From: Podarcis filfolensis | Lineage: Eukaryota | Assembly: GCA_964270895.1 (NCBI GenBank) | Contig: OZ185436.1 | DNA: 64,000 bases | Direction: 5' to 3' (one strand) | Shown here: piece after piece, positions 19,910 to 52,100 of the stretch | Layout: every line of letters begins with the position of its first letter | How positions within the stretch are numbered: position 1 is the first letter of the stretch | Notes under the pieces: model-generated | Databases searched by the model: none | The model's input: only the letters and a program-made list of their open reading frames with translations | Told to the model about the DNA's origin: nothing | Translations under genes and position numbers: made by a program

Positions 19910-22900
19910 GTACAGTGGTACCTCGGGTTAAGAACTTAATTCATTCTAGAGGTCTGTTCTTAACCTGAAACTGTTCTTAACCTGAGGCACCACTTTAGCT
20001 AATGGGGCCTCCTGCTGCCGCCATGCCGCCACCACACGATTTCTGTTCTCATCCTGAAGCAAAGTTCTTAACCCGAGGTACTATTTCTGTGTTAGCGGTG
20101 TCTGTAAACCTGAAGCGTCTGTAACCCGAGGTACCACTGTATAATAGAACTGCAATGAGGACAGGAAAAGCCATGCTGGTTGCTTAGTGCTGTTTCCTCA
20201 CGTCCTGCTTACAGGCTTCCCTTCAGCATCTGATTGGATGCTGTGGGAAATGGGATTCTGGGCCAGTTAGGCCTTTGGTCAGACCCATCAGGACTCTTCT
20301 TGTGCCCTTACGGGCTGAAACGTCCTCCTACCATGGCCACTTCCAGACGTCTGCCATTTTGTGGGTGGGATCAATTTTCATACCAGCAAATTCTGGTTGT
20401 GCAATTAAAGCAGATTAGGGGCTACTGTGCAACAAAATCCCTCCCCTCAACCATGGTGTGGTGTCTTACTTTCCCCTCCCCCTTTTCTTTTGCACCTGTC
20501 ATCAAAACAGGTGGAGTCAAGGGGGAGCAACATTTGTTTGGGAGGCTGTGCTGGTGGTGGGGGGGCGCCCCCCAATATTTTGTTCAAGTTGGCACCAATG
20601 TCAAGCAGCAATTGTACTCGAGAGACTAATGTGCTGTTTACGGCTTACCTGAATGCATGGGGGAGAGCACAGTTATGTTGCAAGCCTGCTTATCAAAAGG
20701 AAACGTGAAGATGTGCAGACTGCAAGATGATGTCAGGTGAAAAGCCTGGTGCTGCATCATGTCTCCACTGGAAGAAACGCGAAGGAACGGGCTGGTTCTG
20801 GACTTCTCTTCATTGGCCCTGAAACATTGCCATTAAGGACCAAGAGATTAAGCAACAGGCTTGGAATCACTTGTTTTAGTTCAGGTAACCCTTTCGCAGC
20901 TTTCCCTGCCCCTCGCCATCCCAATGTCCTTTTCTCTCTCTCTGCATTTTTGATTATTTGGTATTGGGTTGGTTGTATGTGATAGTGTTTTTAATACTAT
21001 TTGCACATGCAAAAGTTCCTGGGCTGCTTTATTTCTAATCAGTGCATGTCCTGTGGCTTCCCGCTGGAATCCTGCAACTTTTTGCGCCCTTAAATGTTCC
21101 TTTTTTGTTTCGTCTTGGTTTCGTTGCGCTATAGCAAAAGAGTGTCCCTCCAGACGGCAATAGTGCAATAACATTGGGGGGAAATCACAGAACAACCAAT
21201 AACGCTGAGAGATGTGTGGACCACCGCTGAGGCACTATTCTTATGTTAATAACACGTTACAGAATACATCTGTAAAAAACACCAGTCTGGAGGAGCCCTC
21301 AATCCTAAAGACTGAAATATTTAAAGCATATTACAAGTATGTTGCACAGTAATTTGTAAGATGCTTGTAACATAAACAGTATTAACAAGGAACTGAAAAT
21401 GTGAAGTTAAGGCAGGCAGTTCTGGAATATATATATATATATGGTGTATTCCCCCCATATCACCCTATCGGCTAGTCTTTGTAGTAACCTCCAGTTAAAT
21501 ACTTCTATAGTAAACTTAGGGCATGTAACTCTTGCCTACAACATAAGAGTCCCAGGGTGGTGTCCTGGCCCCCTGTCGCCCGCCACATCTTCCCCCTGTC
21601 AGCAGCACCCCTAACAGTCCTACATTGAGGCTGAAATCTGAAGAGAGGTTCTTTTTGTGTTGAAAATACACTGCGCAAGAGGAACGGGTTAAGTTCCCTC
21701 CCTGCCAATCACAGCCTGACTGTCTCTCCCTCTCCCTCCTGCCATTTCCTTATGGATTTGTCCAAGGGCAACAGTTTTAACACTGCTACTACCTCAAGAA
21801 TTGAAAAGGGAGACGACAAGCTCAAGTCACCCATGAAGGTGGCTCAGTGCAGGGAGCAGTGCTTGTACAGTGGTACCTCGGGTTACACACGCTTCAGGTT
21901 ACATATGCTTCAGGTTACAGACTCCGCTAACGCAGAAATAGTGCTTCAGGTTAAGAACTTTGCTTCAGGATAAGAACAGAAGTCGTGCTCCGGCGGCGCA
22001 GCGGCAACAAGAGGCCCCATTAGCTAAAGTGGTGCTTCAGGTTAAGAACGGTTTCAGGTTAAGAATGGACCTCCGGAACGAATTAAGTATTTAACCCGAG
22101 GTACCACTGTGCTGTGCAGAATGACAGCTGAGACTCATTTGCGATGTACTCCCTTTCTCTTCATCAACAAAAGCATAAGCAGGTCAGCAGTGGGTGGGTG
22201 GGTGGGAGAAGCACAGAGAGCAAGAGAATACAATGCATGCCGCCACACAAATTAATGCCACAGAGCTACAGATCCGACCCAAACAGCTGGTATTAATTTT
22301 AGTGGGATAAGCCACACAGAATCTTACATTCTCCACAGCTCTTAAAAGTATCTGAGCTTTTCAAGATCTGGAAGCAGCTGGCCAGGCAGAATTAAGTACG
22401 TTTACACCCCATTGATGATTTCAGCAGGAGAATTAAAACCATCTTACCTCTGTCCAGCTGAAATTAATTGTGTTTACCTTTGTCTAAACCAAACTCATGT
22501 GAAGTATCAAGACAGGCAAACACTCCAGGGATCAAAATTGACTGAAGACCACAAATGCCCCAGATAGTTGGGAGAGGGAAGACATCACCATTACTAGTGT
22601 GTTGCTATAGTTTTCCTGTGGGGGTTGTTTTGCTTTTATGGTATAATGCAGTGGTTTACAACCAATGTGCTGTGGCACCCTGGGGTGCCTTGAATGATGG
22701 TCAGGGGTGCCGCAGGGCAACACTGGCCTCTGCCCCTCTTTCCTTCCCTCCCTCCTCTGATGCCCTCTTGTGCCTCTGCCTCCCAAAGGCTTACATGGCT
22801 GTTTGTTGTAGCAGCCCTGGCTACAAGGTCCCCAGGTGAATGGTGCCTCTGAGAGGCACCTCTCTTTGGGGTGGGGTGGGGGGCAGCTCAGAGACCAGCT

Positions 22901-25408
22901 GCCTGGAGGACTCCCAAGGAGAGGGGAGAAGAGGCTGAAGGAACACTCCACAAGGAAGGGTGTTCGAAAAAGGGTGAGGGGCTGCCAGCTCTGCAGGCAA
23001 AGTGTGACGTAACAGGGCTCCTGAGCCCCACAGGGGTGCCACAGAAAGAACGTAGTTGGTTAAGGGAGCCGTGGACTCAAAAAGGTTGAAAATCTCTGAT
23101 ATAATGTATTTATTTTAATGTTTTCAGATGTGTTGCAAGTCACTTGGAGACCTTTGGGTAACTAGTAACTAACAAGTCTAATTAACTTATCACCATTGCT
23201 ACCACCAATATAGCCATTTGTTTACTCTCTAGCATGAATTTTAAATTTTCTAACTTCATCTAACTATTTGTGGGTGTTTCCCAAAGCTTAAACCATCATT
23301 TCATCTGCAAACAACACTTGTTTAGTATTCAGAAGGTTGGAGCTGCTAAAGCTTTTTTGGGAGGGAAGGGGAGAAATCAACATAAGCATTGCTTTAAATA
23401 AGTTGCCAATGGAATAAGTGATCCTTACTGTTCTTCTATAGAGATTTCAGGGATCCAGAATTTATCCGCTGGGAGAGTGAGATGGGTAATGCCACAGAAG
23501 TCAGAGGAATTCCATGACACAAAGTCATTTCTCCATTTCTACATTACAGAGTTGAGTGAGCAAAAAGATTAGTGTACAACATCTCAGTTTGCTTATTTAG
23601 GAGAATTGATAAAATCTCTGAGCAGTGGACATAAAGCAATGACTATTAATAACAGCCAGAGAAGATCAGCATTAAAAAAACCCAACAATCAAGTAAAAGA
23701 TATGTGCAAATAGGCTTGTAGAAATAAAAATGTTTTAGTAGGCATCTAAATCAGTGTAAAGGGACGCGGGTGGCGCTGTGGGTTAAACCACAGAGCCTAG
23801 GACTTGCCGATCAGAAGGTCGTCGGTTCGAATCCCCGCGATGGGGTGAGCTCCCATTGCTCGGTCCCTGCTCCTGCAAACCTTGCAGTTCGAAAGCACAT
23901 CAAAATGTAAGTAGATAAATAGGTACCGCTCTGGCAGGAAGGTAAACGGCGTTTCCGTGCGCTGCTCTGGTTCGCCAGAAGTGGCTTAGTCATGCTGGCC
24001 ACATGACTCAGAAGCTGTACGCCAGCTCCCTCGGCCAATAAAGCGAGGTGAGCGCCGCAACCCCAGAGTCGGTCATGACTGGACCTAATGGTCAAGGGTC
24101 CCTTTACCTTTACCTTTAAATCAGTATAATGAAGGTGCTTGCTGTCACATTGAAATACTGACTTCTCACAAATGTGGAACAAACATGGTATAGCATTTGT
24201 TACTGTGCAAGCTCTGCAGATCAAAGTGGTCAAATAGGTATGTAGGTGCTCTGTCAAGTAAATGGTTTCCAAATTCTTAATGGCTTTATATACTTAATAG
24301 TAAAATATTGAATTTGGCCCACTCAGCAATCCGGCGGCTACTGCAGATCTTGAAGCAGAAATATAATGTGGTCCAGGATTTCACTCCTGTTAGCAATCGT
24401 GCTGCACCGTTCTGCACTAACTGCAGTTTCCAGACCAACCATAAGGGAAGCCCCACAAAGAGTGCATTGCAGTCATTCAGTTGTGAAGTTATGGGTCTGC
24501 TATGGGTCAAGCTATCTCAGTCCAGGAATGGCCATAGCTGCTGTACCAGCTGAAGTTGGCAAAAGGTTATCCTAGACACAATATTCATCTGGGCCTTCAG
24601 CAACAAAATTGGATCCAGGAGCACCCTAAGATTGCTCCTCCAAAAGGAGTGAGACCCTTTCCAGGTCAGGCAACTGGTCCATTTCTTGGAAATGGGAAGC
24701 ACTCAGCCCCATTCCTTTTCCTTACCAAGATTCAAGCTCAGCTGGACAAACCAAGGGCTAGTATAATATGATAAAAAAGAGAGCCTTACCACAAACAGCC
24801 AGAAGTAAGTTGTAATCACTTGCAACTTCTCTACCTGTAAAGAAACAAAAACAGAAGGGGCACAACCCATCCACAGTGATGCACCTTCCGAAATTGACGG
24901 GCTTAACTCTTTAACTTGAAATCAGTGGAACATAAAAATGCTTCACTTTGTCTGGATCACCCCCAAATGATAAAATTCCCTCCTCCTCGCTTGTTTGAAG
25001 TGTGAAGCTCGCCGGAGATTTTGGCGTCTTACCACTGTCAGGATAGAGACGAGAGTAAAATCCAACTTGACAGTCAAAGGTTTTCTCCAGTCCTTCTTGG
25101 GTCTGGTATACAGGAGGAGCTTGTTGTCGTTAGAAATATTCAGATATTCAACCACACTGTGATGTGAACAGTTCCATGTGAAGGCAATTCCTACTGCAAA
25201 TGGAATGAAAAGTTTTCTTATTCCTAACCACCTCTCAAACCAGGAACAGCCTTTCTCACTAACTGCCTATTACGGATGGCAACATATGAGAGCAAAATCA
25301 CTGTTCCTAATTCAGACACTAACCCATCCCTTAGACCGTCATCATAGGAAAAAGAGTCTTACCTGGGAACAGAGCAAAAAGGGCACAACAGACAAACGAT
25401 TTCCACAT
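10107..25408 (-). CDS. 5-HT3-receptor-like Cys-loop ion channel subunit, copy A (443 aa); coding exons 25363-25408, 25033-25193, 24790-24834, 23429-23538, 20649-20818, 19418-19578, 17592-17802, 15228-15395, 10107-10366
   Basis: Nine GT-AG exons (46/161/45/110/170/161/211/168/260 = 1332 nt, open). Signal peptide MWKSFVCCALFALFPVG, RPKKDWRKP, WxPEI loop A, Cys loop CSLHIFTFPFDKQAC (C-x13-C), NGEW, pre-M1 QRRP, M1-M3, M2 EKINVKITLILEVSF, MA and M4 ending WRSEM*. The 45/110/170/161/211 internal exon pattern is that of HTR3 genes. Confidence 0.93.
10599..13419 (+). mobile_element. 5'-truncated L1-clade LINE (ORF2: RT domain plus C-terminal Cys knuckle, uninterrupted), in intron 8 of copy A, antisense
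   Basis: Open frame to 13152 with PGPDG, YRPISLLN, DAEKAFD, GTRQGCPISP, FADD and CWKC..FFHLWWTC motifs. AATAAA at 13388, poly(A)18 at 13402-13419, exact 19-bp TSD CAAACTTACTAAGTTTTGG at 10580-10598 and 13420-13438. Confidence 0.97.
13827..13867. repeat. (GTT)n microsatellite
   Basis: Perfect trinucleotide run. Confidence 0.95.
15547..16019 (+). mobile_element. BovB (RTE) LINE 3' fragment in intron 7 of copy A
   Basis: VMYGSESWTIKKADRRRIDAFELWCWRR...ALVHGVTKSRTRLND*; (CAA)n tail; 11-bp TSD AAGTTCTGTTC at 15536-15546 and 16020-16030. Confidence 0.95.
18614..18865 (-). mobile_element. Squam3-type tRNA-derived SINE
   Basis: Reverse complement is CAGTGTGGTGTAGTGGTTAAGAG...GGGTGACCTTGGGC...CTCACCTCACAGAGTGTTTGTTGTGGGG, with a (TCT)n tail. 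Confidence 0.8.
19913..20139. mobile_element. Tc1/mariner-type MITE (CAGTGGTACCTC TIR, TA TSD), copy 1
   Basis: TA-CAGTGGTACCTCGGGTTA...TAACCCGAGGTACCACTG-TA. Confidence 0.9.
21868..22109. mobile_element. same MITE family, copy 2
   Basis: Same TIRs, opposite orientation. Confidence 0.9.
22649..23098. mobile_element. hAT-type non-autonomous element (450 bp)
   Basis: Imperfect TIR CAGTGGTTTACAACC / GGTTGAAAATCTCTG; 8-bp TSD RTATAATG. Confidence 0.7.
23761..24116 (+). mobile_element. full-length Sauria SINE
   Basis: GGGACGCGGGTGGCGCTGTGGGTTAAACC head with B box GGTTCGAATCCC, body, and (ACCTTT)n tail; TSD TAAATCAGTRTAA at 23747-23759 and 24117-24129. Confidence 0.95.
24290..24720 (-). mobile_element. 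degraded L2 fragment in intron 3 of copy A
   Basis: DCNALFVGLPLWLVWKLQLVQNGAARLLTG motif. Confidence 0.8.
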
Positions 25409-27270: not shown

Positions 27271-27299
27271 TTGTTTGAAACCACAGGAGGGGTTCTCAG

Positions 27300-27342: not shown

Positions 27343-27344
<2 letters not shown>

Positions 27345-28218
27345 CTTGCAGTTTTTCTACACGCGCCTGGCTGGCCCCTGTGAGAACAGAATGCTATCAA
27401 ATGGGCAATTGGCCTGATCTTTCAGGATCTTATTGTGTTCTTAAGTGCACAACCTGAATTTCCCCATATGTGATTGACTCCCCATTGGAAAAAGAGCGAC
27501 AGTCTGGAAGCACCCTAAGTCCTTTGTCATCATTCTCAACCAACAGTTTCATTTCAGGGAAAGAAGAGTGATCTGTAAGGCGAGCAGCTTCTGCCCTTTC
27601 TGCTCCACCTATTTTTATTGGTTCACTTTCCAATAAAACTAAACTTGGGGTGGGTGTGGGATGATTAGGAAAAAGCCAACAACTGAAGGCAGTGGCAAGG
27701 ACCCATCTCCTTAATGGAAAGTTGAAGCACTCTTCTGACACTGCGGTTATTGAAACACAACTGCACATTTCATATGCATATTGAAAATGGATCCCTGGGG
27801 CTTTCTGGGTGGCAGATAATGGAGAAGAAGGAACATAGCCAAAATGCTGTACTGGACAGATGTCTGTGATGGGTTACTTAATGTTAATTGCTTCAAAGCA
27901 GTGGCCTCAATTTGAAGGAATCAGAGAAGTTCCTTTGTATGGTTACATCCTGTTCAATTACATGGAATTTGCAAGCTGCTTCATTGCCTTTTCCAGTGGT
28001 ATTCTCATACCGTACTCACCAGATGCACCAACCGCAGGGGGCTGAGGGGTCTTTGGCCCCTCTGTATCTGGGGGCAAGGGGCCAGGCCCCTGAATGTTGA
28101 GTGGGTGGAAGCAGTGGCGGAGCTTCATGCTCCTGCACCAGGGGCGGAGAGCAGGCAGGGGCATGGCTGGTGCGCATCCCGGGGGCGTGGCACATCGCCT
28201 GTGTGGGTGTGGTGCTCA

Positions 28219-39000: not shown

Positions 39001-42000
39001 CACAGTTTGCTCAAAAAAAATGGTAGTGATGTATCAGTAGCACACACATGGTCAGCCTCCAATGGGAGCAACTCTGAATTATTTTGAGAGGCAACTTTGA
39101 CCATTGGTAAGGGGAGCAAACATGCAGGGAAGAGTGATTATGGGGAGAGAGTGAAGAAAGATGCAGAAAACAGGGAACGTAGGGCACATTCAGAAAAACA
39201 CAAGCGGAGTGTATAGTGGGGACCTCCTGATGAAGGGTGGATAAGAAATACAGCGAACAAATAATAATGGCTTGTTCCCCATGCTAGTCCTACTTCACAT
39301 CGACCCATTGAAAGTACAGTGGTACCTCAGGTTACAGACACTTCAGGTTACAGACTCCGCTAACCCATAAATAGTACCTCAGGTTAAGAACTTTGCTTCA
39401 GGATGAGAACAGAAATCGTGCAGCAGCAGCAGGAGGCCCCATTAGCTAAAGTGGTACCTCAGGTTAAGAACAGTTTCAGGTTAAGAACAGACCTCCGGAA
39501 TGAATTACGTTATTAACCTGAGGTACCACTATAATGGACTTGACTAACCCAATCTTATCTTACAACATAATAAAGTTGTAAGGCTGTCATCATGCTGCAA
39601 TTGGAAATTCAGGCATTTTTCGCTTCTTACCACATCTGCAGCCTTGCCATAAATGTTAGGGAGGGGTGGAACAAATGGGAGAAAATCTCCTCTTCATCTG
39701 TTCCCGCCACCCCCATCCCCATGCTGCTGCTCTGAGGTGCAAAAAACACCTGCATTTAAAAATGCAGCCATTCTTGTCTCTTCCCACAGTAGAAACCATG
39801 CTCCCTTTGTTGGCAACCCCATTGGAGGTAGGGCTTGGTGATGTGCAAAGGGATGGGGGTTGGGCAAGCTGTTAGGGCTTTGGGGCCATTGAGAGAGCTG
39901 CGGCGGGATTGGGGGTTGGGTGAGGTGTAAACGGAGGGGAGTTGGCAAGCTGCGTAGGGTTTAGTGGGGTTGGTGAGCCACATAAGCTGGGCTGCAGCCC
40001 CTGGTTATAATAATTGCCGAGATAGGTGGAAAAGGGGGTGAAGTGTGGTGGTTTGGAGTTCAACATAAGAGTGAGTTCATGGGGTGCAAATTGGGGGTGT
40101 GAATTCAAGAGGGTACAAATGAAGAGAGAGAAGCCAACTATCATGCCAGTTCAACGAAATACATGGTTTTACCTGAATGTATCGATGACATTATGCTTAT
40201 GTTGCATTTTTGTTGATCGAAAGGAAACGCATGGACATCCAGACTGCAGGATGAAGTCAGTCGGTAGGCTTGAAACATTTGAATGGAACCGTCGGCTGAT
40301 ACATAAGCAAAAGGGCTCTGTGTGAACTTGTCTTCATCTGCCCTAAAGACAGCGTATTGTAATTAGGAAAGCTTTGCATTTTGCACAGATTAGATAACCC
40401 GTAAGTCTGGCCCCTACATGGGAAGCCTCATTGTTAATCATAGAACTGTAAAGTTGGAAGAGACCCCAAGGATCATCTAGTCCAGCGGTTCTCAACCTGT
40501 GGGTCCCCAGATGTTGTTGGACTACAACTCTCATCATCCCTAAGCTCTGGTTTTGCTAGCTAGGGGTGATGGGAGTTGTAGTTCAACAACATCTGGGGAC
40601 CCACAGTTCAGAAAAGCTGATCTAGTCCAACCCCCTGCGATGCAGGAATCTGTTTGCTCAATGTGGGGCTCAAACCCACAACCCTGAAATTAAGAGTCTC
40701 ATGGTCTACCAACTATTTGTTGGAACAACCAACTAAAGCAGGGATTGTCAGCCTGGTCCCTACCGCCCACTAGTTTCAGGATTCTAGATGGGCGGTCGGG
40801 GGTTCTATGGCAAAAGTTGAATCCTCCTTCCATCAAGCACTGGTGGGTGGTAAGGAAATTTTACCATCAAGAAAGATGCATTAGTGGGTGGTAAGTACAA
40901 AAAGGTTGACTACCCCTGATCTAAAGGGTCAACATGTAGATATTGACTTCATGACAATAATAAAACATAAAATATAACTGAATGATGATATAAAATACTT
41001 ATAACAAACAAATAATGAATCAAAACTTGTACAATTTTCTAATTTATTCCCATCTCATCAGCGGGAAACTGGGGGTGAAGAACAAGCAGAATGTGGACAA
41101 GCCCTTAGACCAAATTCTGTGCCAAGAAGACTTGAGGCAACCTGAACTCAGTCAAACAACGCAAAATTCACAGGTTCTTGCCTTAGCCCTGGCAATGGTG
41201 TCTGTATTTGTGCTCAGCCCCCAGCCCAGCGCTGTTAAACCTCTGGCTATCATGGCAGGCAGCCTTCTCAACGCCTGGGAATGGATATGGTAAAGTGGTT
41301 TCAGTACATGGCTGCACCAAAAGCGACCCTGTGAATTTGCCCACAAAATGCAGTTTGGAAACACATTCACCATGGGATAAAAGCGGCATTACCGTTCATC
41401 TATGTAGAGGTCTGGGGTCCAGAAAAGGTTCACAGGCAAAGTGATATTTGTAATGTTACAGAAATCCAAGGGATTCCATGAGACAAATTCATTGTCCCAG
41501 AACTAGAGGAAAGAAAAAATATATTACTTACAATAAAATAAAATAAAATCATGGGAGGATAGATCTGTTTGCTATTTACAGAGAAGAAAGAGGACCTCAC
41601 CACATACATCCAGAAATAGAATGTGACCACCTGCAATTTTTCTTGCTGCAAGGAACCAAAAGGGAAAAGATTAACACATTATCTTCCTCCTGTCCAAGAG
41701 AATTAACACAGAGACAGATATATTGGTGGTACAATGGGTGGGTGGGAGATGGATGTTCCTCTTTAAAAATCCACCTGTCCCCAACTGATTGGTGGCCCTG
41801 CCTGTCACACACAGCTAGAATTTAAGCTATGAATCCAGTAAGCGACTGTTCTGCAATTTCCCCCAACAGTTTGCAATTGTAAGGCAGCACTCCATATCCA
41901 ACCTCCCTTCCCTTTCTTTGCCCCCTCCCCAGTATTTGTGCTTAGCCCCATCACTAGCAACCAACCGTGCAATGATTATTCTCTCTTACCACTGAAAGGA

Positions 42001-43081
42001 TGGACACCAGGGTGAAGTCTAGTTGAACTTCTATAGACTTTTCCCAATCATTCAGAGGTATGGTGTATAAGAAGAGATCCTTATTAGAAGAGATGTTCAG
42101 GTACTCAGCCACATCGTGATACCTACAATTCTGTTTCTGGGTGGCTTCTGGAGTGGGGACAAAATGAAAAGATGAATGTGTCAGTATGGTAAGATTCAAA
42201 AGTCCTTGTTCTGTTCTTGTTCTTGTTTACAATTTATTACCTGCTCTTCAACCTAATGTTCCAGGTTTGGTTATGCTGGGGAAATATTGGAGTTCAGTAC
42301 CCAATACCCTGTGGGTTCAGCCTGGATGGCCAACAGAATCCGGACACCAATTGTTAGTCAAATAGGACATTTATTTAGATATTGCAAGGCTGGTTTCACA
42401 CAGCCTCAACCAGCAAGTAGTTATGGATGGCACACCAAATATGAAAGAAGTATACACATTTATACAATTACAAGCACAGGGAAGCAAAGGGGCTGTTATG
42501 TCCCTATATGGCAATACGTCTTTCTACTAGCTTATACTGGTTTAACCCTCCCTCCTTTTTCCTCAACAGCTACAGCAATAGCTCCTGCACATGTGTTCTT
42601 CCATCCTTCTTGCATGGTTCTCCTGCAAACACAACCTTCACATTCCAGCCTTCACTTGCTCAGCCTTTTCCTCACACATTTCAATTCCCCTTTATTCTTT
42701 TATAATGTTATTCTCCCTTCCAGTTACAATTAAAACACAACATTATATGAAAACACAACATTAAAAGCAGTTTAAAGAAACTTAAGAATACGAAAATAAG
42801 GCGGATGCTAAAAAGAGACATCTCAAGTGTCAAAAGCCCCAGCAAAGAGGTGCATCTAGGCAGAGTCAGACAGTATCCTTTCTCTCCTCTTCCTTTGCTG
42901 TATCCCATTATTTCGAAAGCCAGTGAACTCGAGAAACTGCTGCCTTTCATTCTAGCATCCAACCTACCTTCTATAAAGTCTCTTAGTTGATTTGTCAGCT
43001 ATTAAAACGAGAGAGAGGAGAAGAAATGGTTTTACCTGGCACCCAAGAGAGTAGAAAACTAATCATAACAGTTCTCCACAT
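33002..43081 (-). CDS. 5-HT3-receptor-like Cys-loop ion channel subunit, copy B (447 aa); coding exons 43036-43081, 41990-42147, 41601-41645, 41393-41502, 40173-40342, 38718-38878, 36080-36290, 34471-34644, 33002-33270
   Basis: Nine GT-AG exons (46/158/45/110/170/161/211/174/269 = 1344 nt, open). MWRTVMISFLLSWVP signal, WTPDLYIDE, Cys loop CSLDVHAFPFDQQKC, SGEW, M2 GEKIAFKMTLILQISF, C-terminus QWTR*. Confidence 0.93.
34100..34330. mobile_element. same MITE family, copy 6 (intron 8 of copy B)
   Basis: TIRs, TA TSD. Confidence 0.9.
34960..35720 (+). mobile_element. L2 3' fragment interrupted by a Penelope-like fragment (35229-35571)
   Basis: RKQAFSAVAPCLWNALPREV L2 end. The insert has a Penelope-type terminus (CTGAAGAAGTGTGCATGCACAC...TTAGTTGGTCTCTAAGGTGCTACTGG) and a 13-bp duplication GCCCTTTTAAAAT at 35216-35228 and 35572-35584. 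Confidence 0.75.
36941..38580 (+). mobile_element. degraded 5'-truncated L1-clade LINE in intron 6 of copy B
   Basis: ORF2 C-terminal pieces (KMNLLPK, WQGKRPRI, PDLKLYYEAA, MVYRWYLTP, CWKC*) homologous to the 10.6-kb L1, with one frameshift and one stop. AATAAA near 38558; 12-bp TSD TTTACCTAAAAT at 36929-36940 and 38581-38592. Confidence 0.93.
39317..39531. mobile_element. same MITE family, copy 7 (intron 5 of copy B; absent at the homologous site of copy C)
   Basis: TIRs, TA TSD; the homologous site in C near 50085-50100 is empty. Confidence 0.9.
40436..40714 (-). mobile_element. tRNA-Lys-derived SINE with CR1-like tail, interrupted by a hAT MITE (40483-40619)
   Basis: Degenerate tRNA-Lys head (AGTTGGTAGACCATGAGACTCTTAATTTCAGGGTTGTGGGTTTGAGCCCCAC) and CR1-type tail. 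The inner element has CAG..CTG termini and an 8-bp TSD ATCTAGTC. Confidence 0.75.
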
Positions 43082-44390
43082 TCTTCTCTGAGAGTCAAAC
43101 CAAGTGTTTTTAAGAGAAGAAGCAATAACCTGCTAGGCTGCTAAATTTGCAGCGGTGAGGAAGAGCCACATTTCTGTGTGAAATTGAGATCTCTCCTGGC
43201 TGTGGGGTAATGCATTTCACATCTCTGGTTTTGAATCTCATTTCCATGCATTTGCTCGTAATGATATTTTCTCGTAACTTTATTGGCTCTGCATTAGCAT
43301 CTGTATATTTCTCCCTGTTGGGATCACCCAACTAAAACATTTGCTTTCGCTTCCTCTAGATTTGTGTTTAATTAAGGATCTGGCTTCCCATTAGTGTGCA
43401 TTACTTACTCCTCGTTGAGGTCCGGATGTTTCTTTCCAGACAATTATGAGTTGTTCTTTTAATGCACTCTTTGCAAATGTTGTTAAGACAAATATTGTAA
43501 TTAGATATCAGGCACTACACTCCTGCCTCTTTGAAAATGCAACACACTTCACTTAGTAAAATACACAGTAGGGCCTGAAGGCATATCAACCCTACTCACA
43601 TATATCTACGGTGTTTAAACCCATTGGTGTCTTCAAATGATCCTGGGAATTGTGGTTTGGTATAGATGCTGCCAAAATTCTGTGACAGAGCCATGGTTCT
43701 TGGACATAACTACAGTTCATAACCTCCAGATGTTGCCGAACTGCAACTCCCATTGTCCCTAAGCTTTGGCCATGCTGGCTGGGGCTCATGGGAACTGAAG
43801 TCCAGCAGCATCTGTAGGACCACCAGTTCTCCACCCTTGACTTAAGGCCATGCTTCTCATCCTTTTTAAAAAAACCCATCTTCCCTTTGTGATAGCATAA
43901 AAATTCCCCAGCAGTCTCCAGAAGTTACCATGTAAAATTCCCACAATGCCTCCAACAAGGCATTGCTCTGGGGAATTGTGGGAAATTTAAATGGCAACTC
44001 CTGGACCCAGACATGTTTTTCAAAGGAGTGCATGAATGTGGTGTCAGCAGAGAACCTCGCTGGGGCCCTGGCAACTGCTTGAGGATGCCACATACTGACG
44101 CCAGGCCAGAAAACTTGCCACCCAATGAAGCCTTGAAAAACCAGCACTTCTGAATGATTGGTTTTGTGAGGCTTGATTGAGTCGTAAATTTTGCAGTGTT
44201 TTTACATATTTCCAAGCATGAAAGGCTTTGACTTTAGTAAGCACACTTCCAACAGCAAACACCACTTGGCTGAGGCATTTCATCAAGTCTCATTTGCTGA
44301 TTTTATACAAATTGGTATAGTTAGGATACTTGTACAACGGGCATTGGTTATGCACTCCTTGGTCTACCACAAATACCAATAATATATAAT

Positions 44391-47300
44391 TTAGCATGTC
44401 CACTGCACGGCAACAAAAGTTAAAAAGATGAATGAGAAAATCAGGCGGGTAAAATAAAGCCCTTTCTCCACAAGGAGGATCATATTATCCCACACAACTG
44501 ATTCAGAGTCATCCTGGCATTCTTCTAGGGAGAGATGTTTCCTGATCTGTTGCAATTCTGCATTAATATGTTTCAGAAACACCAAACTCTCTTCTTCATG
44601 GCACTTTTCTGACAAGGATGATCTGCCTGCCTGCTGGCTCCCTTTGGGCAGCCCGTCTCCTGCGTGGAAGAAAATGAAGACTGTATATGTTAACATGTTA
44701 AGAAAATCCTATGTAGGAACAGACATTGTTTGAGAATTAAAAATGGAGAGTTAAAAAACTACTGGCTGTTTTGATTCTAAATTCTGGCATTTGGTTCACC
44801 TGTCGAAGCAACCTAAGAAATCCTGAAGGTCGTCCAGTGGGTTTCTACTATCTCAATTCCTGGACAATGGATCCTGGACAATGTTCTTACCTCTTTCATC
44901 AGAGGAGTAATGGGGACAGCCTGGTGCCTCAAGTCCATTTCTTACATTACACAGAAATAAACTCAGCCTTATTCCAGCTGTACATTCAGGAGGGACTGGA
45001 CATTGTCTCCATGACTTTATGCCATGAAGTGACCCATAAATTAGCTAAATAAAAAACTAAATAAATAGCCAATCCTTCACGTACTCCTAAAAATGAACTG
45101 TGAAAAGGATTTGGTTTTTTTTTTAAAGCACTGGATTATGGTGCTTGACATTTGCCCCCTTCTCCCTCTTTATTGATCTTTTTCTCCATTATGTAAGAAA
45201 AAGAAAAAAAACATTTTGGAAAGTGCTTACCTAAATCAGCCACAGGCTTCTCAGATTGCTTTTTCTTCTTTCTCAGAATTATATTCATAAATTTATTCCT
45301 CATGAAGGGTGGGGACTCTGGTTTCTTCTGTTTAAGATAGAGTACGAAAGCATTCTCCAGGATACCAAAGACCATAAATACAAATATCCCGGTGAAAAAC
45401 ATGGCTGTGTTGGAGAAGAAATGGATGGTAAATATTTGGCCCTTCAGGCGACTGTTCTTTTACGCTAGAGTGGGAGGGGCCTGGCAGGAGGCAGAAAATA
45501 AATGGGGAGTGTTGTGGCACTGAGAAGATATGCTGTAGGGACCACACAAGTAACATGTGGGTTGCTGGTTTGGTGCTCCTATGTCTGTAGATGCTTTGTC
45601 TGTGATGGGATGTATGTATGGTAAAGATGACGGTCGTTTTGGGGGAGCTTGAAATAACTTGAGTGGGAATTAGGTCTAACTCCAAAGGAATGTGGGGGAA
45701 GTGTAGTGATGGTGGTGTCGGCGTTTGTAGACGGAGCCTGGGATAGTGACAATGGGTGATGGTTCTTCTCCCCACCAGATTTTGTGGGCATCCAATCACC
45801 AGTGTAACTACAGTGACAAATGGGCCAGATTGCTTGCAGAAACTTGTAGAAGCTCTAGTTCTCCTTTATGAGAATTAAATGCCCCAAAACTCACACACTT
45901 TGTAGATTATAGAAGGTATAAAATAAGGATAAATCCAAAAATACACCAAAGCATTGAAACACAAAACCGAGTCATCTTGCCCTCTTTGGCTAGCATGGAA
46001 TCCTTCTCTCTTAAATTCATAATAGTGAAATAGAGAGAAATAGGGATTTCCATGGCCAATCAAATAGATTCATCATTAAAAAGACTACTTTTGTCTTCCT
46101 GTCCTTCTCCTGCAGAGGAACCCATAGGACAAGACTGGTTAGTTGTTGAAGCACCATGGAGAGTTCCTAGGGGACAAGTTGCTCAAACTGGGGTTGGAAC
46201 TGGACTGAGGCCTCTACCATCAGTCCACAACTCTTATATGAACAACTGCCTTTTGGAAATCCAGACTCCCTTAAAGGGCCACCTTCTGGCCCGAAAATGG
46301 ACATTGCTCTTGGGTCCCATGGCCTCCCACTTGGTGTGATTCCTATGCTGTTGGACTGGCCATGTACTGGGGTTCCTCAGGCCTAAGTGGAGACACCTGT
46401 CCCATCTCTGGTTCTGTGGACCCTGGGTTCTATAAATCCTGGTGCTGTGGCAGCTATTAAAGGGGCTTTGGCCATCTGTTCCTTTGTCCCACTTTTTCCT
46501 TGAAGGAGTGCCAACTTCCAGTCCATAGAACATTGAGGATTTAACTCAACTGGGGTGCACTCCTAACTCCTTGGAGTAAGTCACATTGATTTCAACAGGA
46601 CTTACTCATGGATGGGCATGGTTAGACTCATGCTGTTGTTCACTAGAAGATTGTGCTGTGCAAACCTTTGTCAGAGATGCATAACACACTGCAGGCCTTT
46701 GCTGCTGTTCTCAAATGGTAGAAAGGCATTAAAGAGACCCTTCTTTCCCTATCTCGTGCGGAGGTCAATGGGTACTGCCAGTGTTGAACTAAAAGCTACT
46801 ATAGCATAGCAGCTGCAAAACAGGATGTCTTCCCTGGGACAAATCTCTCAGGGTGGCTAGCTAAACTCTCTCATTCTTTCCCCACATCTGAGATATATGG
46901 ATAATAACACCAAGATACCTTGCAGAGCTGTTGTAAGATCCGCAAGTTCATGTCACTGAAGTGCTTTAATATGTACTAAACAAATGATAAGGAGTATCTT
47001 TATTCTAGTTCTGTACAATGCCAGGTAATTACGATTTACAAAATAATATCTCCAGCTAAAAATCAGTTACTGACTCAGGGACCTGGTTGCTGGACCACAA
47101 TGTGAGTAGGTCCAATGAAAGCAACCAAAACTATTTGACAGCCCCCCAAAACTGTTCAAAGGCTGCCAGGGCTGAATAATCTGTGCAGTAAAAGGTGGTT
47201 ACCTATGACTGGTGGATCATCTGATGCTGATGGTAGCATATCATTCAGAATCAATGACAAGAGTGAGACTTGCAGGATCAGTGTCACTTTGAAAGCAATC

Positions 47301-50300
47301 TTTTCTCCAGGGCAAGCAAACGCATAAGAAATAGCCATATCCAGCAAGAACAGAGTAAAAGTTGGCAGGATCAGAACCAACACATACAAAATGGATTGCC
47401 TCTTCATAGAAACCTGTCCCAAAAAAGGACAAAACAAGAATGAAGATTACAGCAAAGAATGGTACTATCCTTTCAGTCTCACTAGTAGCATCAATTTGCC
47501 CATGGTCCTTATTCTTAGCAGCCTAAGAGTGGGTGAGACCATTTGGAGGACTGTTAAACAGGTGATATAATGAAATTCTGTTAGAGGGGATTTGAGGAAG
47601 TCAGTTGTCAATGTAATGAAATTAGGGATATGAAGTGATAATTCTTTTTTGTGTCTTTTTTCTTTGTTTTGTGTTTTGTAATGTTTTTCTTTTTCTTTGT
47701 GATAAATGTGAAAATCAATAAAAAAATTGGGGGGGGGGGGGGAAGAGTAGGTGAGACCATTATTTTCTCTCTTCCGAAAGCACGTCAAACTGCAAGTAGA
47801 TAAAAAGGTACCGCTCCGGCGGGAAGGTAAACAGCGTTTCCGTGCACTGCTCTGGTTCGCCAGAAGCGGCTTAGTCATGCTGGCCACATGACCCGGAAGC
47901 TGTACGCCGGCTCCCTCGGCCAATAAAGCGAGATAAGCACCACAACCCCAGAGTCGGCCACGACTGGACGTAATGGTCAGGGGTCGCTTTACCTTTACCT
48001 TTAAAATGTTTCATGGAAAGTGTGGGATAACACTGTATTTGACACGACGACATATAACCTGCCCACAAACAAACTAAATAAACAGGTCATCTGAAAGAAC
48101 CCAGGTTGTGCTTGCTTCTGCAACTCATCTACTAACCCAATGCATGCTTACCATATTTTTTGCTCTATAAGACTCACTTTTTCCCTCCTAAAAAGTAAGG
48201 GGAAATGTGTGTGCGTCTTATGGAGCGAATGCAGGCTGCACAGCTATCACAGAAGCCAGAACAGCAAGAGGGATTGCTGCTTTCACTGCACAGTGATCCC
48301 TCTTGCTGTTCTGGCTTCTGAGATTCAGAATTTTTTTCTTCTTGTTTTCCTCCTCCAAAAACTAGGTGCGTCTTGTGGTCTGGTGCGTCTTATAGAGCGA
48401 AAAATATGGTGCTTCTTCAATGATCTTACTAGATAAGTGTGCATAGGATTGCAACCTCAGGATGCTATTCTGTTTGTATTGCTGCAGCTTGAACGATTAC
48501 TTAAAATCAAAGTGTCCATCGTCAACATATTGCAAAGGACAATTGATTTATCTTTTTGAAAATGAGCCAGTAATGGTTGGTTGGCATCCTTCTGTCTCAG
48601 GAGACAGTAAAGGATGTGCCTTTGGGGAGTGAAGTCAAACCGTTGGAGAGGCACATTGCCTGCTGTTCAGGCTGTAGAGATCAATATGGGAGAGACATGT
48701 TTGCTTGCAGCTGGGGCAGATGAAGGCACCCAGCTGTGCTGCAGCAGTTGCACCATGGCGTTTCCTCTCTGCATTCCTCCCAGCAGTCATTCCTTCTCTG
48801 GTCACTGCTGTGGATACATGACCTGACTGCTTGTCTCCAGGCTCTGCAGTTGTCTGCATGGGATTCCCACACGGTGGGGTTGATGTTGCCAGCCTTCTTC
48901 TGTGTAACACAGAGTTGGTTGGCCAATGGGCTTTGTACCTGAAGCCAGCTCCCCATAAAGCACATCCTTGGGGGTCCTGCCATATTCCATTCTGTGGACA
49001 TGACCAAGCTGCCCACATAGATGTAACTGAGACAGGAGTGTAGGAATGTGGGCTTGCAAGAGCACATCTTTGCTTGAGACTCTGTCCTGCCATGTGTGGC
49101 TCAAAATCTGCCTGACGCAGTGCATGTGGAAGACATTGAGGCAACACGCCTGATGCCTGTAAGCTGCCCATAAAGCAGTGTGCTCAACATACAAGCCTGG
49201 TAGACTTTCATCTTGGTAAATTTACTACCCTAAAAATTTAAGCAGCATGCCTGAAATTTTGCTTAAGCATAAAAACGAACACAAACTTTGTCTTAAGCAT
49301 AAAACCGAACGCTAGATATATAGGGATATCTTTCAGTGTTCCCATGTTTTCTAAATGTATTAGAAACCAAATACCTCATAAGTGACAATACTAAAGTTGC
49401 TTATATCATATCCCCAGGTGTGCTCTATGATCCTCAGTTCTTCAAACTTCCATTCTCCACTGCTCAAGAAACTTTTGTGACTATCTTGGTTTGCTTTCAT
49501 GGAAGATTTAGAGCTCTTCAATAGTATTTCCTTATCTAGATTCAGCAGAAGACAAATGAAGGTTGTTAGTTTAGGGCAGTATAGAAAATCACAATCACAT
49601 CCTCAGTAAAATATATATATATGAAACATAAAGCTGATGAACCCGTTAGGAGCACAGACTGTGTATATACTTCAGTAGTGATGTCTGTCAGCCCTCTTAG
49701 GTCTTCCTTTTGAGGTTGTGCCATAACTCTTCCATCTTGTCCCACAGCTTGCTCAGTGTGCGAATTAAGCCCCGATGTGGCATCACACCCAAACTGGTAG
49801 TGATATACCAATAGCAGACATGTGGTCAGCCTCCCATGGGAGCAACTCTCAAAACTGAGAGAAGACTTTGACCTGGGGACATTGGCAGGGGGAGCAAGCA
49901 TACGATAAGGAGTGATAATAGGGAGACACTCAAGAAAGATGTGGAAAACAGGGAACGTAAGGCACATTTGGAAAGGCACAAGCTGAGTGTACAGTGTTAA
50001 CCTCCTAGTGAAGGGGAGATAAGAAATATAGTAAGTAAATAATAATGCCTTGTGCCCAGTGCTAGTCCTACTCCGCAAAGACCCATTGAAATTAATGGGC
50101 ATGGCTAACTCAGGTCCATTATTTCAATGGGTCTACTCTGAGTAGGTCTTAGTTGGATGCAACCTAATCTTATCTTTCTATATAACAAAATTGTAAGGCT
50201 GTCATCATGCAGCAGTTTTCATGGCCACCAATAGGCAGCCATGCAAACTGCAGGTTGGATATACCAGGTAGGCAGAGTGAGAGAGCAATGCAAAGACATG

Positions 50301-52100
50301 GGTAGAGTGATCAGGCCACAAAGGAGCAGGAAGGACAGTTCTACCCCACATTCCACCTCTGATTCCACTGCCATTGATGGTGGGGAGGGCAAAGGGGCAA
50401 AGGTCTCTCCAACATCTATCCCACCCCAAAGTTTATGCTATGATTGCTGCTCAGAGAAGGAGAGAAAAATGCCTGCATTTTGAAATGCAGGGGTTTCTCC
50501 TTCACACAACGACAGCTATGCTAACCCTGTTGTTGTCACCACTGCTGTTGGGGTGAAGAGGAAAGTCTTTTTGCCCTTTGTGGTGGTGGTGAAGTTGATG
50601 AGTTGCAAAGGGAGAGATTTGTAAAAGTATAAAGGGAAGGGTAGGGTGAGCTGTGGGAGAATTGGGAGATTTAAGAAGCTGTAAGAGACGTGGGGGTTGG
50701 GGAGTTAAGAGGAGTTGGGTGTTGGGAAGCTGATTCGGGAGTGGTGTAAAGGTTTAACAAGGGGTGGTAGGTCTGGCAGGCTTGGCAAGCAAGACCTAGG
50801 TGGGAAAGGGGTGAATTGTGAAGGTTGAAGAGTGAGCATATGGGGTACCAATTGGGAGTGTGCATTCAAAAGTACATGGATGGAGAGATAGAATCAAACA
50901 ATCATGACAGTTCAAAGAAATACAGCTGTGCTTGGCTGTGTTACCTGAACATATTGTGGTCATGGTTAAGTTGCATTTTTGTTTATCAAAAGGAAATGCA
51001 TGGACATCCAGACCGCAGGATGAAGTGAGTCGGTAGGTTTGAAGCAAATGAATGTAGCCATCGGATGTGACAAATGCCATAGGGCTGAGTGTGAACTTGT
51101 CTTCATCGGCCCTAAAGATACGGTTATCGTAAGGAAAGCTTAGCATTTTGTACATATTAGACAACCTGCATTAGTAAAAATGGACTTAAGCAGGGCATGT
51201 GGCAAGAGATGAGTAGTAGTGTGGAGACCCTACCATTTTAAAAGACCAAGGGGAAAGCCACCTATGCAATGGGTGGATGATCTGAAACTAACAGCAGGGT
51301 TTGCATGGATGCAGCAAGCAAACAAAAGAGAGTGCTGGGGACAACCTGAAGAGGTGTACTTCAAAGGATGGATGTGAGATGCAGGAGGAGGAGGAGGAGG
51401 CAATTTATAGGTTTGGCTCCTACATTGAAACCCTCTTTGTCAATGCAACAACCAAACAAACATACAGAGATTGACTGCATGTATTATATAATAATAGAGT
51501 ATAAAATATAACCAAAGGGGGTTATGAAAACATTTATAATATACAAATAAGACATTAATATGTTCACATATAAACAATGTCACCTTATAGGAAAGCCCAG
51601 GTGGATTCCGTAATTTTTTAATTTTCCAACCAAAATATTTCCAATATTTTGCAAAATTCAGCAGCTGTCATAAAAATGTCTGGGGATCGGAATAGTAATG
51701 ATAATGTTAGATTACATCACTTCTCTCAGTGGTGAGATGTTCCAAGTGTGTGGCCCCTACCTGTTTTATTTTCCCCCAGAAGGAGGCTTGTGGCATTTTG
51801 TAATATCTGTTTATCTGCTCCCACATCAGGTCTCGAGAGAGAGGTGGTCAGCACTTCCAAAATGCTGTTGGCTTGCAGAACCCAAGCTCCACTCACTGTG
51901 TCCCCCTTAGCACCCCCCCCCCTCACTCAGAAACCATCTATGGTTCTTTTCACAGATATCTAAATTATATCATCCTTAGCTAGAGGTGGGGGAAGAAAGG
52001 CAGAACAAAAATAAAACCTTTAAATCCTCGTGCTTAGATTCAATTTCAAACAACTGAGAAAAATGAACTTGCTGTATGTTATTTAATAACCCAAGTACTA

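What the first reader, a model, noticed from the sequence alone, without database searches (positions are those of the whole stretch)
20649..51111. Serotonin pocket remodelled while gating machinery is intact: candidate orphan ligand-gated cation channels
Seen, aligned by hand to mouse 5-HT3A numbering: the loop-B Trp (W183, the cation-pi partner of 5-HT) is Pro in A (LSPMHS, 20659-20661), Ser in B (MSSIHS, 40183-40185), and falls in a deletion in C. Loop-D R92 is F/Y/H, and loop-E Y153 is H/F/L. Retained in all three: loop-D W90, the Cys loop with FPFD, GEW, pre-M1 R245, the M1 Pro, -1' Glu and 9' Leu. Inference: these channels likely respond to something other than serotonin, or act as modulatory partners as HTR3C/D/E do. 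A diversifying chemosensory role, by analogy with pLGIC-derived chemoreceptors in cephalopods, is a testable hypothesis.
Basis: partly seen in the sequence, partly recalled or inferred. Interest (0 to 1): 0.78.

Follow-up and report, generated by a model that had tools for sequence, protein, structure and literature searches.

The report
Lizard serotonin-channel-like genes, old orphan branch
This lizard DNA holds three intact neighbouring genes from an old, unstudied branch of the serotonin-gated channel family, found in fish, amphibians, reptiles and birds but in no mammal seen here; almost the whole branch lacks the key serotonin-contact residue, so the change is real but ancient, not a lizard novelty.

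Summary
Three minus-strand, nine-exon Cys-loop channel genes (A 10107-25408, B 33002-43081, C 44391-53562) are intact. The 5-HT3A loop-B Trp is Pro in A and Ser in B. In C it is a non-aromatic residue beside a one-codon deletion. R92 is F/Y/H and Y153 is H/F/L. Cys loop, GEW, pre-M1 Arg, M1 Pro, -1' Glu and 9' Leu are kept.

- The genes are 97-99% identical to Podarcis proteins that NCBI names "5-HT3A-like".
- They lie between MRPL58 and ATP5PD, not at an HTR3A/B or HTR3C/D/E locus.
- They belong to a branch with fish, amphibian, turtle, crocodile, bird and squamate members. I saw no mammal in it.
- The loop-B Trp is missing in 49 of 50 aligned sequences; one caecilian keeps it. Mammalian 3C/3E have Phe there. 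The "remodelling" is therefore ancestral.
- Selection is purifying but weak (B vs C dN/dS 0.51). Binding loops give 0.53, not above 1.
- Three RNA runs showed no reads on B exons.

Best reading: cation-channel subunits that cannot bind serotonin on their own principal face and work as heteromeric partners. An orphan ligand remains possible. The same scan noted the B/C pair separately (s1-271716).

The parts
10107..25408 (-). Gene A, 443 codons, 9 exons: 25408-25363, 25193-25033, 24834-24790, 23538-23429, 20818-20649, 19578-19418, 17802-17592, 15395-15228, 10366-10107 (stop included)
   Evidence: Splice-site and frame reconstruction. 98.6% ungapped identity to P. raffonei P0155. All introns are GT-AG; the exon 8 donor is the weaker gtcagt. 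The signal-peptide exon 1 is 100% conserved in P. raffonei.
33002..43081 (-). Gene B, 447 codons, 9 exons: 43081-43036, 42147-41990, 41645-41601, 41502-41393, 40342-40173, 38878-38718, 36290-36080, 34644-34471, 33270-33002
   Evidence: 97.7% identity to P. muralis P0158.
44391..53562 (-). Gene C, 446 codons, 9 exons: 53562-53517, 53271-53114, 52797-52753, 52638-52529, 51111-50945, 49535-49375, 47413-47203, 45404-45231, 44659-44391
   Evidence: 97.0% identity to P. muralis P0160, whose N-terminus matches my exon 1.
20649..20818 (-). Exon 5 of A: loop E, Cys loop (FPFD) and loop B. The codon at the W183 position is Pro, 20659-20661; the Y153 position is His.
   Evidence: HMMER alignment to mouse 5-HT3A. 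Pfam Neur_chan_LBD, 37.9 bits.
40173..40342 (-). Exon 5 of B: the W183 position is Ser, 40183-40185; the Y153 position is Phe.
50945..51111 (-). Exon 5 of C: 167 bp, a one-codon deletion in loop B. The W183 position is Thr, Ile or the gap depending on the aligner; the Y153 position is Leu.
24790..24834 (-). Exon 3 of A (45 bp), loop D: Trp kept, R92 position Phe. The equivalent exons are B 41601-41645 (Tyr) and C 52753-52797 (His).
17592..17802 (-). Exon 7 of A: pre-M1 Arg, M1 with Pro, M2 with -1' Glu and 9' Leu. The equivalent exons are B 36080-36290 and C 47203-47413.
   Evidence: Alignment A1. Pfam Neur_chan_memb on the exon alone scores 18.9-22.9 bits, below the whole-protein cut-off. The full orthologues carry PF02931 and PF02932.
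319..4448 (+). Flanking gene ATP5PD (mitochondrial ATP synthase subunit d), downstream of A and convergent with it
   Evidence: 97.4% DNA match to the gene called in the P. raffonei locus L002, which carries PF05873.
61186..63700 (-). 3' part of flanking gene MRPL58/ICT1 (RF-1 domain), upstream of C on the same strand. It runs on toward the window end.
   Evidence: 93-97% DNA match to the gene called in the P. muralis locus L001, which carries PF00472.

Best explanation
The window holds the complete three-gene tandem cluster (C, B, A between MRPL58 and ATP5PD) of a lacertid lizard. The genes belong to an old branch of the 5-HT3 receptor family that databases call '5-HT3A-like' and that lies outside the named subunits for which I had sequences (3A in solved structures, 3C and 3E).

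Shown:
- Each gene encodes a full Cys-loop channel subunit: signal peptide, extracellular domain with Cys loop, M1-M3, a short intracellular loop with MX and MA helices, and M4.
- The pore carries the -1' Glu and 9' Leu rings of cation-selective channels.
- The coupling elements are intact: FPFD, GEW, pre-M1 Arg and M1 Pro.
- The principal (+) face of the binding site lacks the loop-B Trp that makes the cation-pi contact with serotonin in 5-HT3A, and most other aromatic contacts. The complementary (-) face keeps the loop-D Trp.
- This state is ancestral to almost the whole branch.

Inferred: these subunits do not bind serotonin at their own (+) face. They most likely work as obligate heteromeric partners that supply (-) faces and pore lining, and so tune conductance and kinetics, either with HTR3A or with each other, as the mammalian B-E subunits do with A.

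B and C are a duplicate pair (dS about 0.3) that probably arose in the lacertid-amphisbaenian lineage. The split of A from B/C predates the squamate radiation.
For: - Intact ORFs and canonical splice sites in all three genes. The ORFs are also intact in P. muralis and P. raffonei.
- Purifying selection. B vs C: dN 0.161, dS 0.315, ratio 0.51, Fisher p = 4e-5. Orthologues pooled: p = 0.005.
- Pfam LBD and membrane domains.
- The closest solved family by sequence is 5-HT3A at 163 bits; the best non-5-HT3 hit, an acetylcholine receptor, scores 125 bits.
- The AF2 model of orthologue P0160 has pLDDT 84, and its best fold matches are 5-HT3A structures.
- Residue mapping.
- Mammalian 3C/3E show the same pattern: Trp kept in loop D, lost in loop B.
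- The published rule is that B-E form no functional homomers and need A (Lummis 2012, PMC3504740).
- Clade structure and distribution.
- Synteny.
Against: - No functional data exist for any member of this branch.
- The branch is distinct from 3C/3E and has its own lineage-specific expansions, which would also fit self-sufficient receptors.
- One caecilian member keeps the loop-B Trp, so the ancestor may have bound an amine itself.
- Lizard A/B/C keep the -1' Glu that mammalian 3C/3E have replaced by Asn, so their pore is more 'principal-like' than that of the known accessory subunits.
- Co-expression with HTR3A is untested.
- Three bulk RNA-seq runs showed no reads on B exons.
- I could not fetch true HTR3A or HTR3B sequences, so they are not on my tree.
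Confidence: 0.55

Rival explanations
1. Orphan ligand-gated cation channels. A, B and C, alone or together, form receptors gated by something other than serotonin: another small molecule, a metal ion or protons, or an environmental or chemosensory cue. The variable pocket would set the specificity.
For: - Pocket positions (92, 128, 130, 141-153, 183, 234) vary strongly across 50 family members, while gating residues are invariant.
- There are repeated lineage-specific duplications: three genes here, several 90%-identity clusters per turtle species, and several distinct teleost lineages.
- The pore is fully canonical with -1' Glu, unlike mammalian 3C/3E.
- Nonsynonymous divergence between B and C is twice as high in the loops as in the extracellular-domain scaffold (0.21 vs 0.10, p = 0.004).
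- A zebrafish '5-HT3A-like' gene is the top marker of a gill cell cluster (PMC9203529). I did not test whether that gene belongs to this branch.
Against: - dN/dS in the loops is 0.53, below 1 and lower than in the intracellular loop and M4. Relaxed constraint explains the data as well.
- The (+) face has almost no aromatic residues left to build a binding box.
- There are no expression data from sensory tissue.
- No ligand is known.
Confidence: 0.3
2. Still serotonin-gated, with the cation-pi contact moved to another aromatic residue, for example the loop-C Tyr in A.
For: E129 is kept in all three and Y234 is kept in A. From general knowledge, other Cys-loop receptors place the cation-pi partner in loop A or loop C.
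Against: W183, R92, Y153 and F130 are all replaced. B and C also lose Y234, which is Phe. Loop B is described as the critical contact for 5-HT (PMC3504740).
Confidence: 0.07
3. Decaying or functionless gene copies kept intact by chance.
For: - dN/dS is fairly high: 0.33-0.82 between species on few changes, and 0.51 between B and C.
- No reads fall on B exons in three RNA runs.
Against: - All 27 exons are open, with GT-AG introns, in this genome and in two other Podarcis genomes.
- Nonsynonymous change is significantly rarer than synonymous change.
- Gating residues are invariant across the family, which spans fish to birds.
- One small-run contig stops exactly at the exon 7 donor of B, as spliced RNA would.
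Confidence: 0.05
4. Sauropsid orthologues of mammalian HTR3C/D/E.
For: - NCBI names one Anolis fragment '3C-like'.
- Loop-B Trp is lost in both groups.
- Both groups share an extra Cys pair near the N-terminus, nearly invariant in alignment A2.
Against: - The locus differs: it lies between MRPL58 and ATP5PD.
- phmmer scores are about 145-180 bits to 3C/3E, against 250-440 bits to bird, turtle, frog and sturgeon members, while 3C scores 287 bits to 5-HT3A.
- The AU test rejects one clade (p = 0.008).
Confidence: 0.03

Closest known systems
Mammalian 5-HT3C and 5-HT3E subunits (HTR3C, HTR3E)
   Same: Same family and fold. Both groups keep the loop-D Trp and have lost the loop-B Trp (Phe in 3C/3E). 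R92 and Y153 are replaced, E129 is kept, and both share an extra N-terminal Cys pair. 3C/3E are known to need 5-HT3A to form channels (PMC3504740).
   Different: - Different chromosomal neighbourhood.
- Not one clade (AU p = 0.008).
- Only about 24-25% identity to the C orthologue P0160.
- Lizard genes keep -1' Glu where 3C/3E have Asn.
- The M2-M3 linker is PPxIA rather than GTPLI.
5-HT3A (HTR3A), the serotonin-binding subunit with solved structures
   Same: It is the closest solved relative by sequence and fold. The Cys loop FPFD, GEW, pre-M1 Arg, M1 Pro, -1' Glu, 9' Leu and the MA-M4 architecture are the same.
   Different: W183, R92, Y153 and F130 are replaced, and Y234 is kept only in A. 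The intracellular loop is much shorter. The phmmer score is 163 bits, against 287 bits for 3C vs 3A.
5-HT3B (HTR3B)
   Same: By the literature it is an accessory subunit that forms no homomers and changes conductance and kinetics of heteromers, with agonist binding at A-A interfaces (PMC3504740). This is the working model proposed here.
   Different: I could not fetch a 3B sequence, so no residue or tree comparison was made.
Cephalopod chemotactile receptors derived from nicotinic receptors
   Same: The idea is the same: a Cys-loop scaffold with intact gating, a pocket without the neurotransmitter contacts, and tandem expansions.
   Different: This is an analogy from general knowledge only. 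Here there are three copies rather than dozens, no dN/dS above 1 in the loops and no sensory-tissue expression data.
Zinc-activated channel (ZACN)
   Same: It is an orphan-type cationic Cys-loop channel that rodents lack. From memory it lies on human 17q25.1, the band syntenic to this lizard locus.
   Different: I did not test this. No zinc-activated channel appeared among the 60 best solved-structure matches. The lizard proteins have the 5-HT3-type FPFD Cys loop.

Membership tests
Cys-loop pentameric ligand-gated ion channel superfamily | Extracellular Neur_chan_LBD domain followed by the Neur_chan_memb four-helix domain | tested here: met
   PF02931 on exon 5 of A, B and C scores 38-44 bits, above the cut-off. 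PF02931 and PF02932 are on record for the 97-99% identical orthologues.
Cys-loop pentameric ligand-gated ion channel superfamily | Cys loop: two Cys 13 residues apart, with the FPFD motif | tested here: met
   Present in A, B and C. Both Cys are invariant in 50 of 50 aligned sequences; in FPFD the Pro and second Phe are invariant and the first Phe and Asp nearly so.
Cys-loop pentameric ligand-gated ion channel superfamily | Subunit fold: beta-sandwich plus M1-M4 | tested here: met
   The AF2 model of P0160 has pLDDT 84.2. The top Foldseek matches are 5-HT3A structures, E = 2e-31, TM 0.69/0.78.
5-HT3 receptor family in the broad sense | Closer to 5-HT3 subunits than to nicotinic or other cationic subunits | tested here: met
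   5-HT3A scores 163 bits and the best non-5-HT3 solved chain 125 bits. All named relatives are '5-HT3A-like'.
Serotonin-binding 5-HT3A-type subunit | Loop-B Trp183 (cation-pi partner of 5-HT) | tested here: not met
   Pro in A, Ser in B, non-aromatic or gap in C.
Serotonin-binding 5-HT3A-type subunit | Loop-D Arg92, loop-E Tyr153, loop-A Phe130, loop-C Tyr234 | tested here: not met
   R92 is F/Y/H, Y153 is H/F/L, F130 is Q/R/R, and Y234 is Y/F/F. Only E129 and W90 are kept in all three.
Cation-selective, gateable pore | -1' Glu ring, 9' Leu gate, pre-M1 Arg, M1 Pro, GEW | tested here: met
   All are present in A, B and C. 20' is Asp in B and C but Ser in A. Conduction itself cannot be tested with these tools.
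HTR3C/D/E orthologue group | One clade with mammalian 3C/3E | tested here: not met
   The tree places 3C/3E outside the fish-plus-tetrapod branch. The AU test of the joint clade gives p = 0.008; I named the group after seeing the tree.
HTR3C/D/E orthologue group | Shared chromosomal neighbourhood | tested here: not met
   The flanks are MRPL58 and ATP5PD. That the human neighbours are at 17q25.1 and HTR3C/D/E at 3q27 is from general knowledge, not tested here.
Accessory (non-A) 5-HT3 subunit, by function | No functional homomer; co-assembles with 5-HT3A and changes its properties | not testable with these tools
   Needs heterologous expression. The only support is the shared residue pattern with 3C/3E and the literature rule.
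Diversifying chemoreceptor family | dN/dS above 1 at pocket sites | tested here: not met
   B vs C gives 0.53 in the loops, with 0.43 on the principal face and 0.62 on the complementary face. This is a pairwise test over 88 codons with low power; site models were not run.
Diversifying chemoreceptor family | Expression in sensory epithelia | not testable with these tools
   Run tissues are coded. Three bulk RNA runs gave zero depth on B exons 2-7.

The most novel reading that the evidence does not exclude
The MRPL58-linked '5-HT3A-like' genes form a vertebrate-wide subfamily of Cys-loop cation channels, not seen in mammals here. Their orthosteric pocket has been freed from serotonin and varies between lineages, so the subfamily would act as receptors for non-serotonin cues (chemosensory, metabolic or ionic). 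The three lizard paralogues would assemble into one or more such receptors without HTR3A.
Probability: 0.25. Interest if true: 0.8.

Novelty: new member of a known kind. Interest (0 to 1): 0.42.

Why it matters
If the reading is right, non-mammalian vertebrates carry a further, unstudied set of 5-HT3-type subunits beside those named in mammals. These subunits could change the conductance, kinetics and drug sensitivity of serotonin-gated channels in reptiles, birds, amphibians and fish, or they could form receptors for unknown ligands.

The cluster is compact (three genes, each 9-15 kb, in a 43-kb span) and the proteins are short (443-447 residues). Direct tests by expression are therefore easy.

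For the scan, the main lesson is that the 'remodelled pocket' is an inherited family trait already present in annotated database proteins. It is not a lizard innovation.

Tried and rejected
1. Placing HTR3A and HTR3B on the tree. None of the three word-based protein searches nor the 150 best representatives returned a true 3A or 3B, so I used HMMER scores against solved 5-HT3A chains instead. No other tool takes a single exon and returns full-length relatives, because a spliced protein has no window reference.
2. HTR3C/D/E orthology. Rejected by synteny, scores and the AU test.
3. Pseudogene. Rejected by intact ORFs in three genomes and by the deficit of nonsynonymous change.
4. Positive selection between B and C. 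Not found in any region.
5. RNA evidence. Neither run search found a holder on record as RNA. Laying three bulk RNA runs on B exons 2-7 gave depth only on intronic repeats. The one lead is a 151-nt contig in a small run of unknown type that ends exactly at the exon 7 donor.
6. Literature. I found no paper on this branch beyond database names. The metazoan 5-HT3 phylogeny paper (PMC9977066) does not separate it.
7. The upstream first exons of the Gnomon models P0155 and P0158 are not signal peptides. I used the conserved MW... exon 1 instead.
Full report
WHAT IS THERE. The window has no N runs and about 43% G+C. An all-against-all comparison of stop-free segments showed three sets of eight paralogous minus-strand exons. 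I fixed the exon borders from AG/GT sites and reading phase. I then found a ninth, 5' exon in each gene that encodes a 15-residue MW... signal peptide ending in a phase-1 GTAAGA or GTAAAA donor.

The three models are:
- A: 443 codons, 10107-25408.
- B: 447 codons, 33002-43081.
- C: 446 codons, 44391-53562.

All are open, and all introns are GT-AG; the only weak site is the gtcagt donor of A's exon 8. The models align without gaps to NCBI proteins of other wall lizards: A 98.6% to Podarcis raffonei P0155, B 97.7% to P. muralis P0158, C 97.0% to P. muralis P0160. All are named '5-hydroxytryptamine receptor 3A-like'. The window therefore comes from a Podarcis-like lacertid, and the genes are already in databases under a generic name.

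THE OBSERVATION. HMMER aligns A's exon 5 to mouse 5-HT3A with LSPMHS opposite TSWLHT and MMQHQ opposite VQNYK. The loop-B Trp is thus Pro (codon 20659-20661) and Tyr153 is His. B has Ser at 40183-40185 and Phe at the Tyr153 position. Exon 5 of C is three bases shorter, a deletion that P. muralis and Zootoca share. HMMER puts Ile opposite the Trp and MAFFT puts Thr there; either way there is no aromatic residue. Arg92 is Phe/Tyr/His.

Kept in all three are the loop-D Trp, the Cys loop with FPFD, GEW, the pre-M1 Arg, the M1 Pro, -1' Glu and 9' Leu. Among the 50 family members aligned, both Cys-loop Cys, the GEW Trp, the pre-M1 Arg and the M1 Pro are invariant. I add four points: Glu129 is kept, Phe130 is Gln/Arg/Arg, Tyr234 is Tyr in A but Phe in B and C, and 20' is Ser in A.

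WHAT FAMILY.
- Domains: Pfam finds the ligand-binding domain on exon 5 of each gene, and both domains are on record for the orthologues.
- Nearest solved family: against all solved structures the C orthologue scores best on 5-HT3A (163 bits). The next best hit is an acetylcholine receptor at 125 bits, with alpha-4 and alpha-7 nicotinic subunits at 113-116 bits.
- Fold: an AlphaFold model built on a 50-sequence alignment has mean pLDDT 84. It shows the beta-sandwich, M1-M3, MX, MA and M4, and its best fold matches are 5-HT3A structures.
- Relatives: a profile of the M1-M2 exon searched against 1.84 billion representatives gave 756 hits. None of the best 150 had the KITLLLGY-type M2 that mammalian 3A and 3C share. 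The ones I named are squamate, bird, frog, caecilian, sturgeon and teleost proteins, all '3A-like'.
- Distance to the named subunits: gorilla 5-HT3C scores 287 bits against human 5-HT3A. The lizard proteins score about 145-180 bits against 3C/3E, about 163 bits against 3A, and 250-440 bits against bird, turtle, frog and sturgeon members.
- Tree: a maximum-likelihood tree rooted on two nicotinic-like proteins gives a tetrapod clade (support 100) of frogs, caecilians, turtles plus birds, crocodile and squamates. That clade joins a fish clade (support 87), with mammalian 3C/3E outside.
- Duplications: within squamates, A-type and B/C-type genes are separate starred clades, each holding one of the two cordylid (Hemicordylus) proteins. 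The split of A from B/C is therefore old. B and C separate near the lacertid-amphisbaenian node.
- Test of 3C/3E orthology: an AU test rejects the tetrapod clade plus 3C/3E as one group (p = 0.008). I named that group after seeing the tree.
- Gap: I could not fetch true HTR3A or HTR3B, so their position relative to this branch is not resolved.

WHERE IT LIES. In P. muralis the gene upstream of C has an RF-1 domain and 207 residues (MRPL58/ICT1). In P. raffonei the gene downstream of A is ATP synthase subunit d (ATP5PD), on the other strand. Both map onto the window: ATP5PD at 319-4448 on the plus strand, and MRPL58 at 61186-63700 and beyond on the minus strand. The window thus contains the whole cluster. 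From general knowledge, MRPL58 and ATP5PD are direct neighbours on human 17q25.1 with no channel gene between them, while HTR3A/B lie at 11q23 and HTR3C/D/E at 3q27. This agrees with loss of the branch in mammals, but I did not test it.

IS THE POCKET CHANGE A LIZARD EVENT? No. In the 50-sequence alignment the Trp183 column holds the following:
- Ser, Thr, Pro or Ala in squamates;
- Thr in the crocodile;
- Phe, Val, Ile or Ser in turtles;
- Phe in birds;
- Ala or Tyr in frogs;
- Tyr or Trp in the two caecilians;
- Glu in sturgeon;
- varied residues in teleosts;
- Phe in mammalian 3C/3E.

Only Microcaecilia and two related caecilian sequences keep Trp. Positions 92, 128, 130, 141-153 and 234 vary just as much. 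Glu129, the pre-M1 Arg and 9' Leu hardly vary. Turtles and birds have also lost the loop-D Trp that lizards keep. Mammalian 3C/3E have Asn at -1' where the lizard genes keep Glu.

SELECTION. I computed Nei-Gojobori estimates with my own script.
- Orthologues: window against Podarcis gives dN/dS of 0.82 for A (only 8 differences), 0.33 for B and 0.45 for C. Pooled, nonsynonymous change is rarer than synonymous change (p = 0.005).
- B against C overall: dS 0.315, dN 0.161, ratio 0.51 (p = 4e-5).
- B against C by region: binding loops 0.53, rest of the extracellular domain 0.36, M1-M3 0.30, intracellular loop 0.76, M4 0.94.

Nonsynonymous divergence in the loops is twice that in the scaffold (p = 0.004). 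This partly bears out the scan's sibling note s1-271716. Nothing exceeds 1, however, and the fastest regions are not the pocket. The genes are under real but weak constraint; diversifying selection is not shown.

EXPRESSION. No indexed run on record as RNA holds exon 7 of B or the last exon of A. I laid three bulk RNA-seq runs (about 12% of each was read) and one small run of unknown type on 36060-42050. The RNA runs gave zero depth on exons 2-7 of B and depth only on intronic repeats. In the small run, a 151-nt contig matches the last 80 bases of exon 7 without a mismatch, stops exactly at the donor (36080), and then continues with sequence that is not the intron. That is what a spliced transcript would look like, but it is a single weak lead. 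Tissues are coded, so absence means little.

HOW IT MOST LIKELY WORKS.
Shown: complete subunits with a cation-type pore and intact coupling elements; a principal face stripped of serotonin contacts; a complementary face that keeps its Trp.
Inferred: the subunits cannot bind serotonin at their own principal face. Like the mammalian B-E subunits, which form no functional homomers and need A (PMC3504740), they act as heteromeric partners. I give this 0.55.

The main rival, at 0.30, is that they form receptors for another ligand. The family-wide variable pocket, the repeated duplications and the fully canonical pore favour this; the lack of dN/dS above 1 and of any expression or ligand data count against it. 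Retained serotonin gating (0.07), decay (0.05) and 3C/D/E orthology (0.03) are unlikely.

NOVELTY AND SCORE. The proteins are annotated, and the loss of the loop-B Trp is shared with known accessory subunits, so this is a new member of a known kind. What I did not find in the searchable literature is any description of this MRPL58-linked branch as separate from 3C/3E and as unseen in mammals. A zebrafish paper reports a '5-HT3A-like' gene as the top marker of a gill cell cluster (PMC9203529), but I did not test whether that gene belongs to this branch. Interest is moderate at 0.42. The orphan-receptor reading has a probability of about 0.25 and would deserve about 0.8 if true.

LIMITS AND RULES. 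No N runs needed handling. The read-laying run used 5,991 letters.

Noticed in passing
window 10534-13149 (+), inside intron 8 of gene A: An uninterrupted 872-codon ORF with a reverse-transcriptase domain (RVT_1, 132 bits), antisense to gene A. It is probably a fairly young LINE copy. Related, broken pieces lie at 36938-38381 in intron 6 of gene B.
   Followed up: partly
window 39260-39659 and 40460-40659 (introns of gene B): Short interspersed repeats with very high depth in all three RNA-seq runs (250-890 per strand) and in a small run. Reads run off into unrelated sequence on both sides, so they come from copies elsewhere in the genome.
   Followed up: no
window 25363-25408 and 43036-43081; compare 28021-28128 and 43908-44093: The NCBI models of the A and B orthologues (P0155, P0158) start at upstream exons that encode no signal peptide. 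A conserved MW... signal-peptide exon lies just upstream of exon 2 in both genes and matches the annotated start of the C orthologue. The database N-termini of A and B are probably wrong or alternative.
   Followed up: partly
codons for Cys23 and Cys98 of P0160 (exons 2 and 4 of A, B, C): An extra Cys pair, one in the N-terminal helix and one in the DFC motif, is nearly invariant across the branch and also present in mammalian 3C/3E. It is absent from the 5-HT3A stretch shown in the alignments. It may be an extra disulfide and a shared old trait.
   Followed up: no
window 319-4448 (+) and 61186-63700 (-): The flanking genes are ATP5PD and MRPL58. From memory they are direct neighbours in human, so the three channel genes sit in an interval that is empty in mammals.
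   Followed up: partly
alignment A2, turtle and bird rows: Turtle and bird members have also lost the loop-D Trp (Leu, Val or Ile). Turtles have Asp at -1' and Ile at 9', so the pore and pocket have drifted further there than in lizards.
   Followed up: no
window 36080-36159 (end of exon 7 of gene B): A 151-nt contig of run X5 (type unknown, depth 2.9) matches 80 bases without a mismatch and leaves the genome sequence exactly at the splice donor. This may be a spliced transcript of B.
   Followed up: partly
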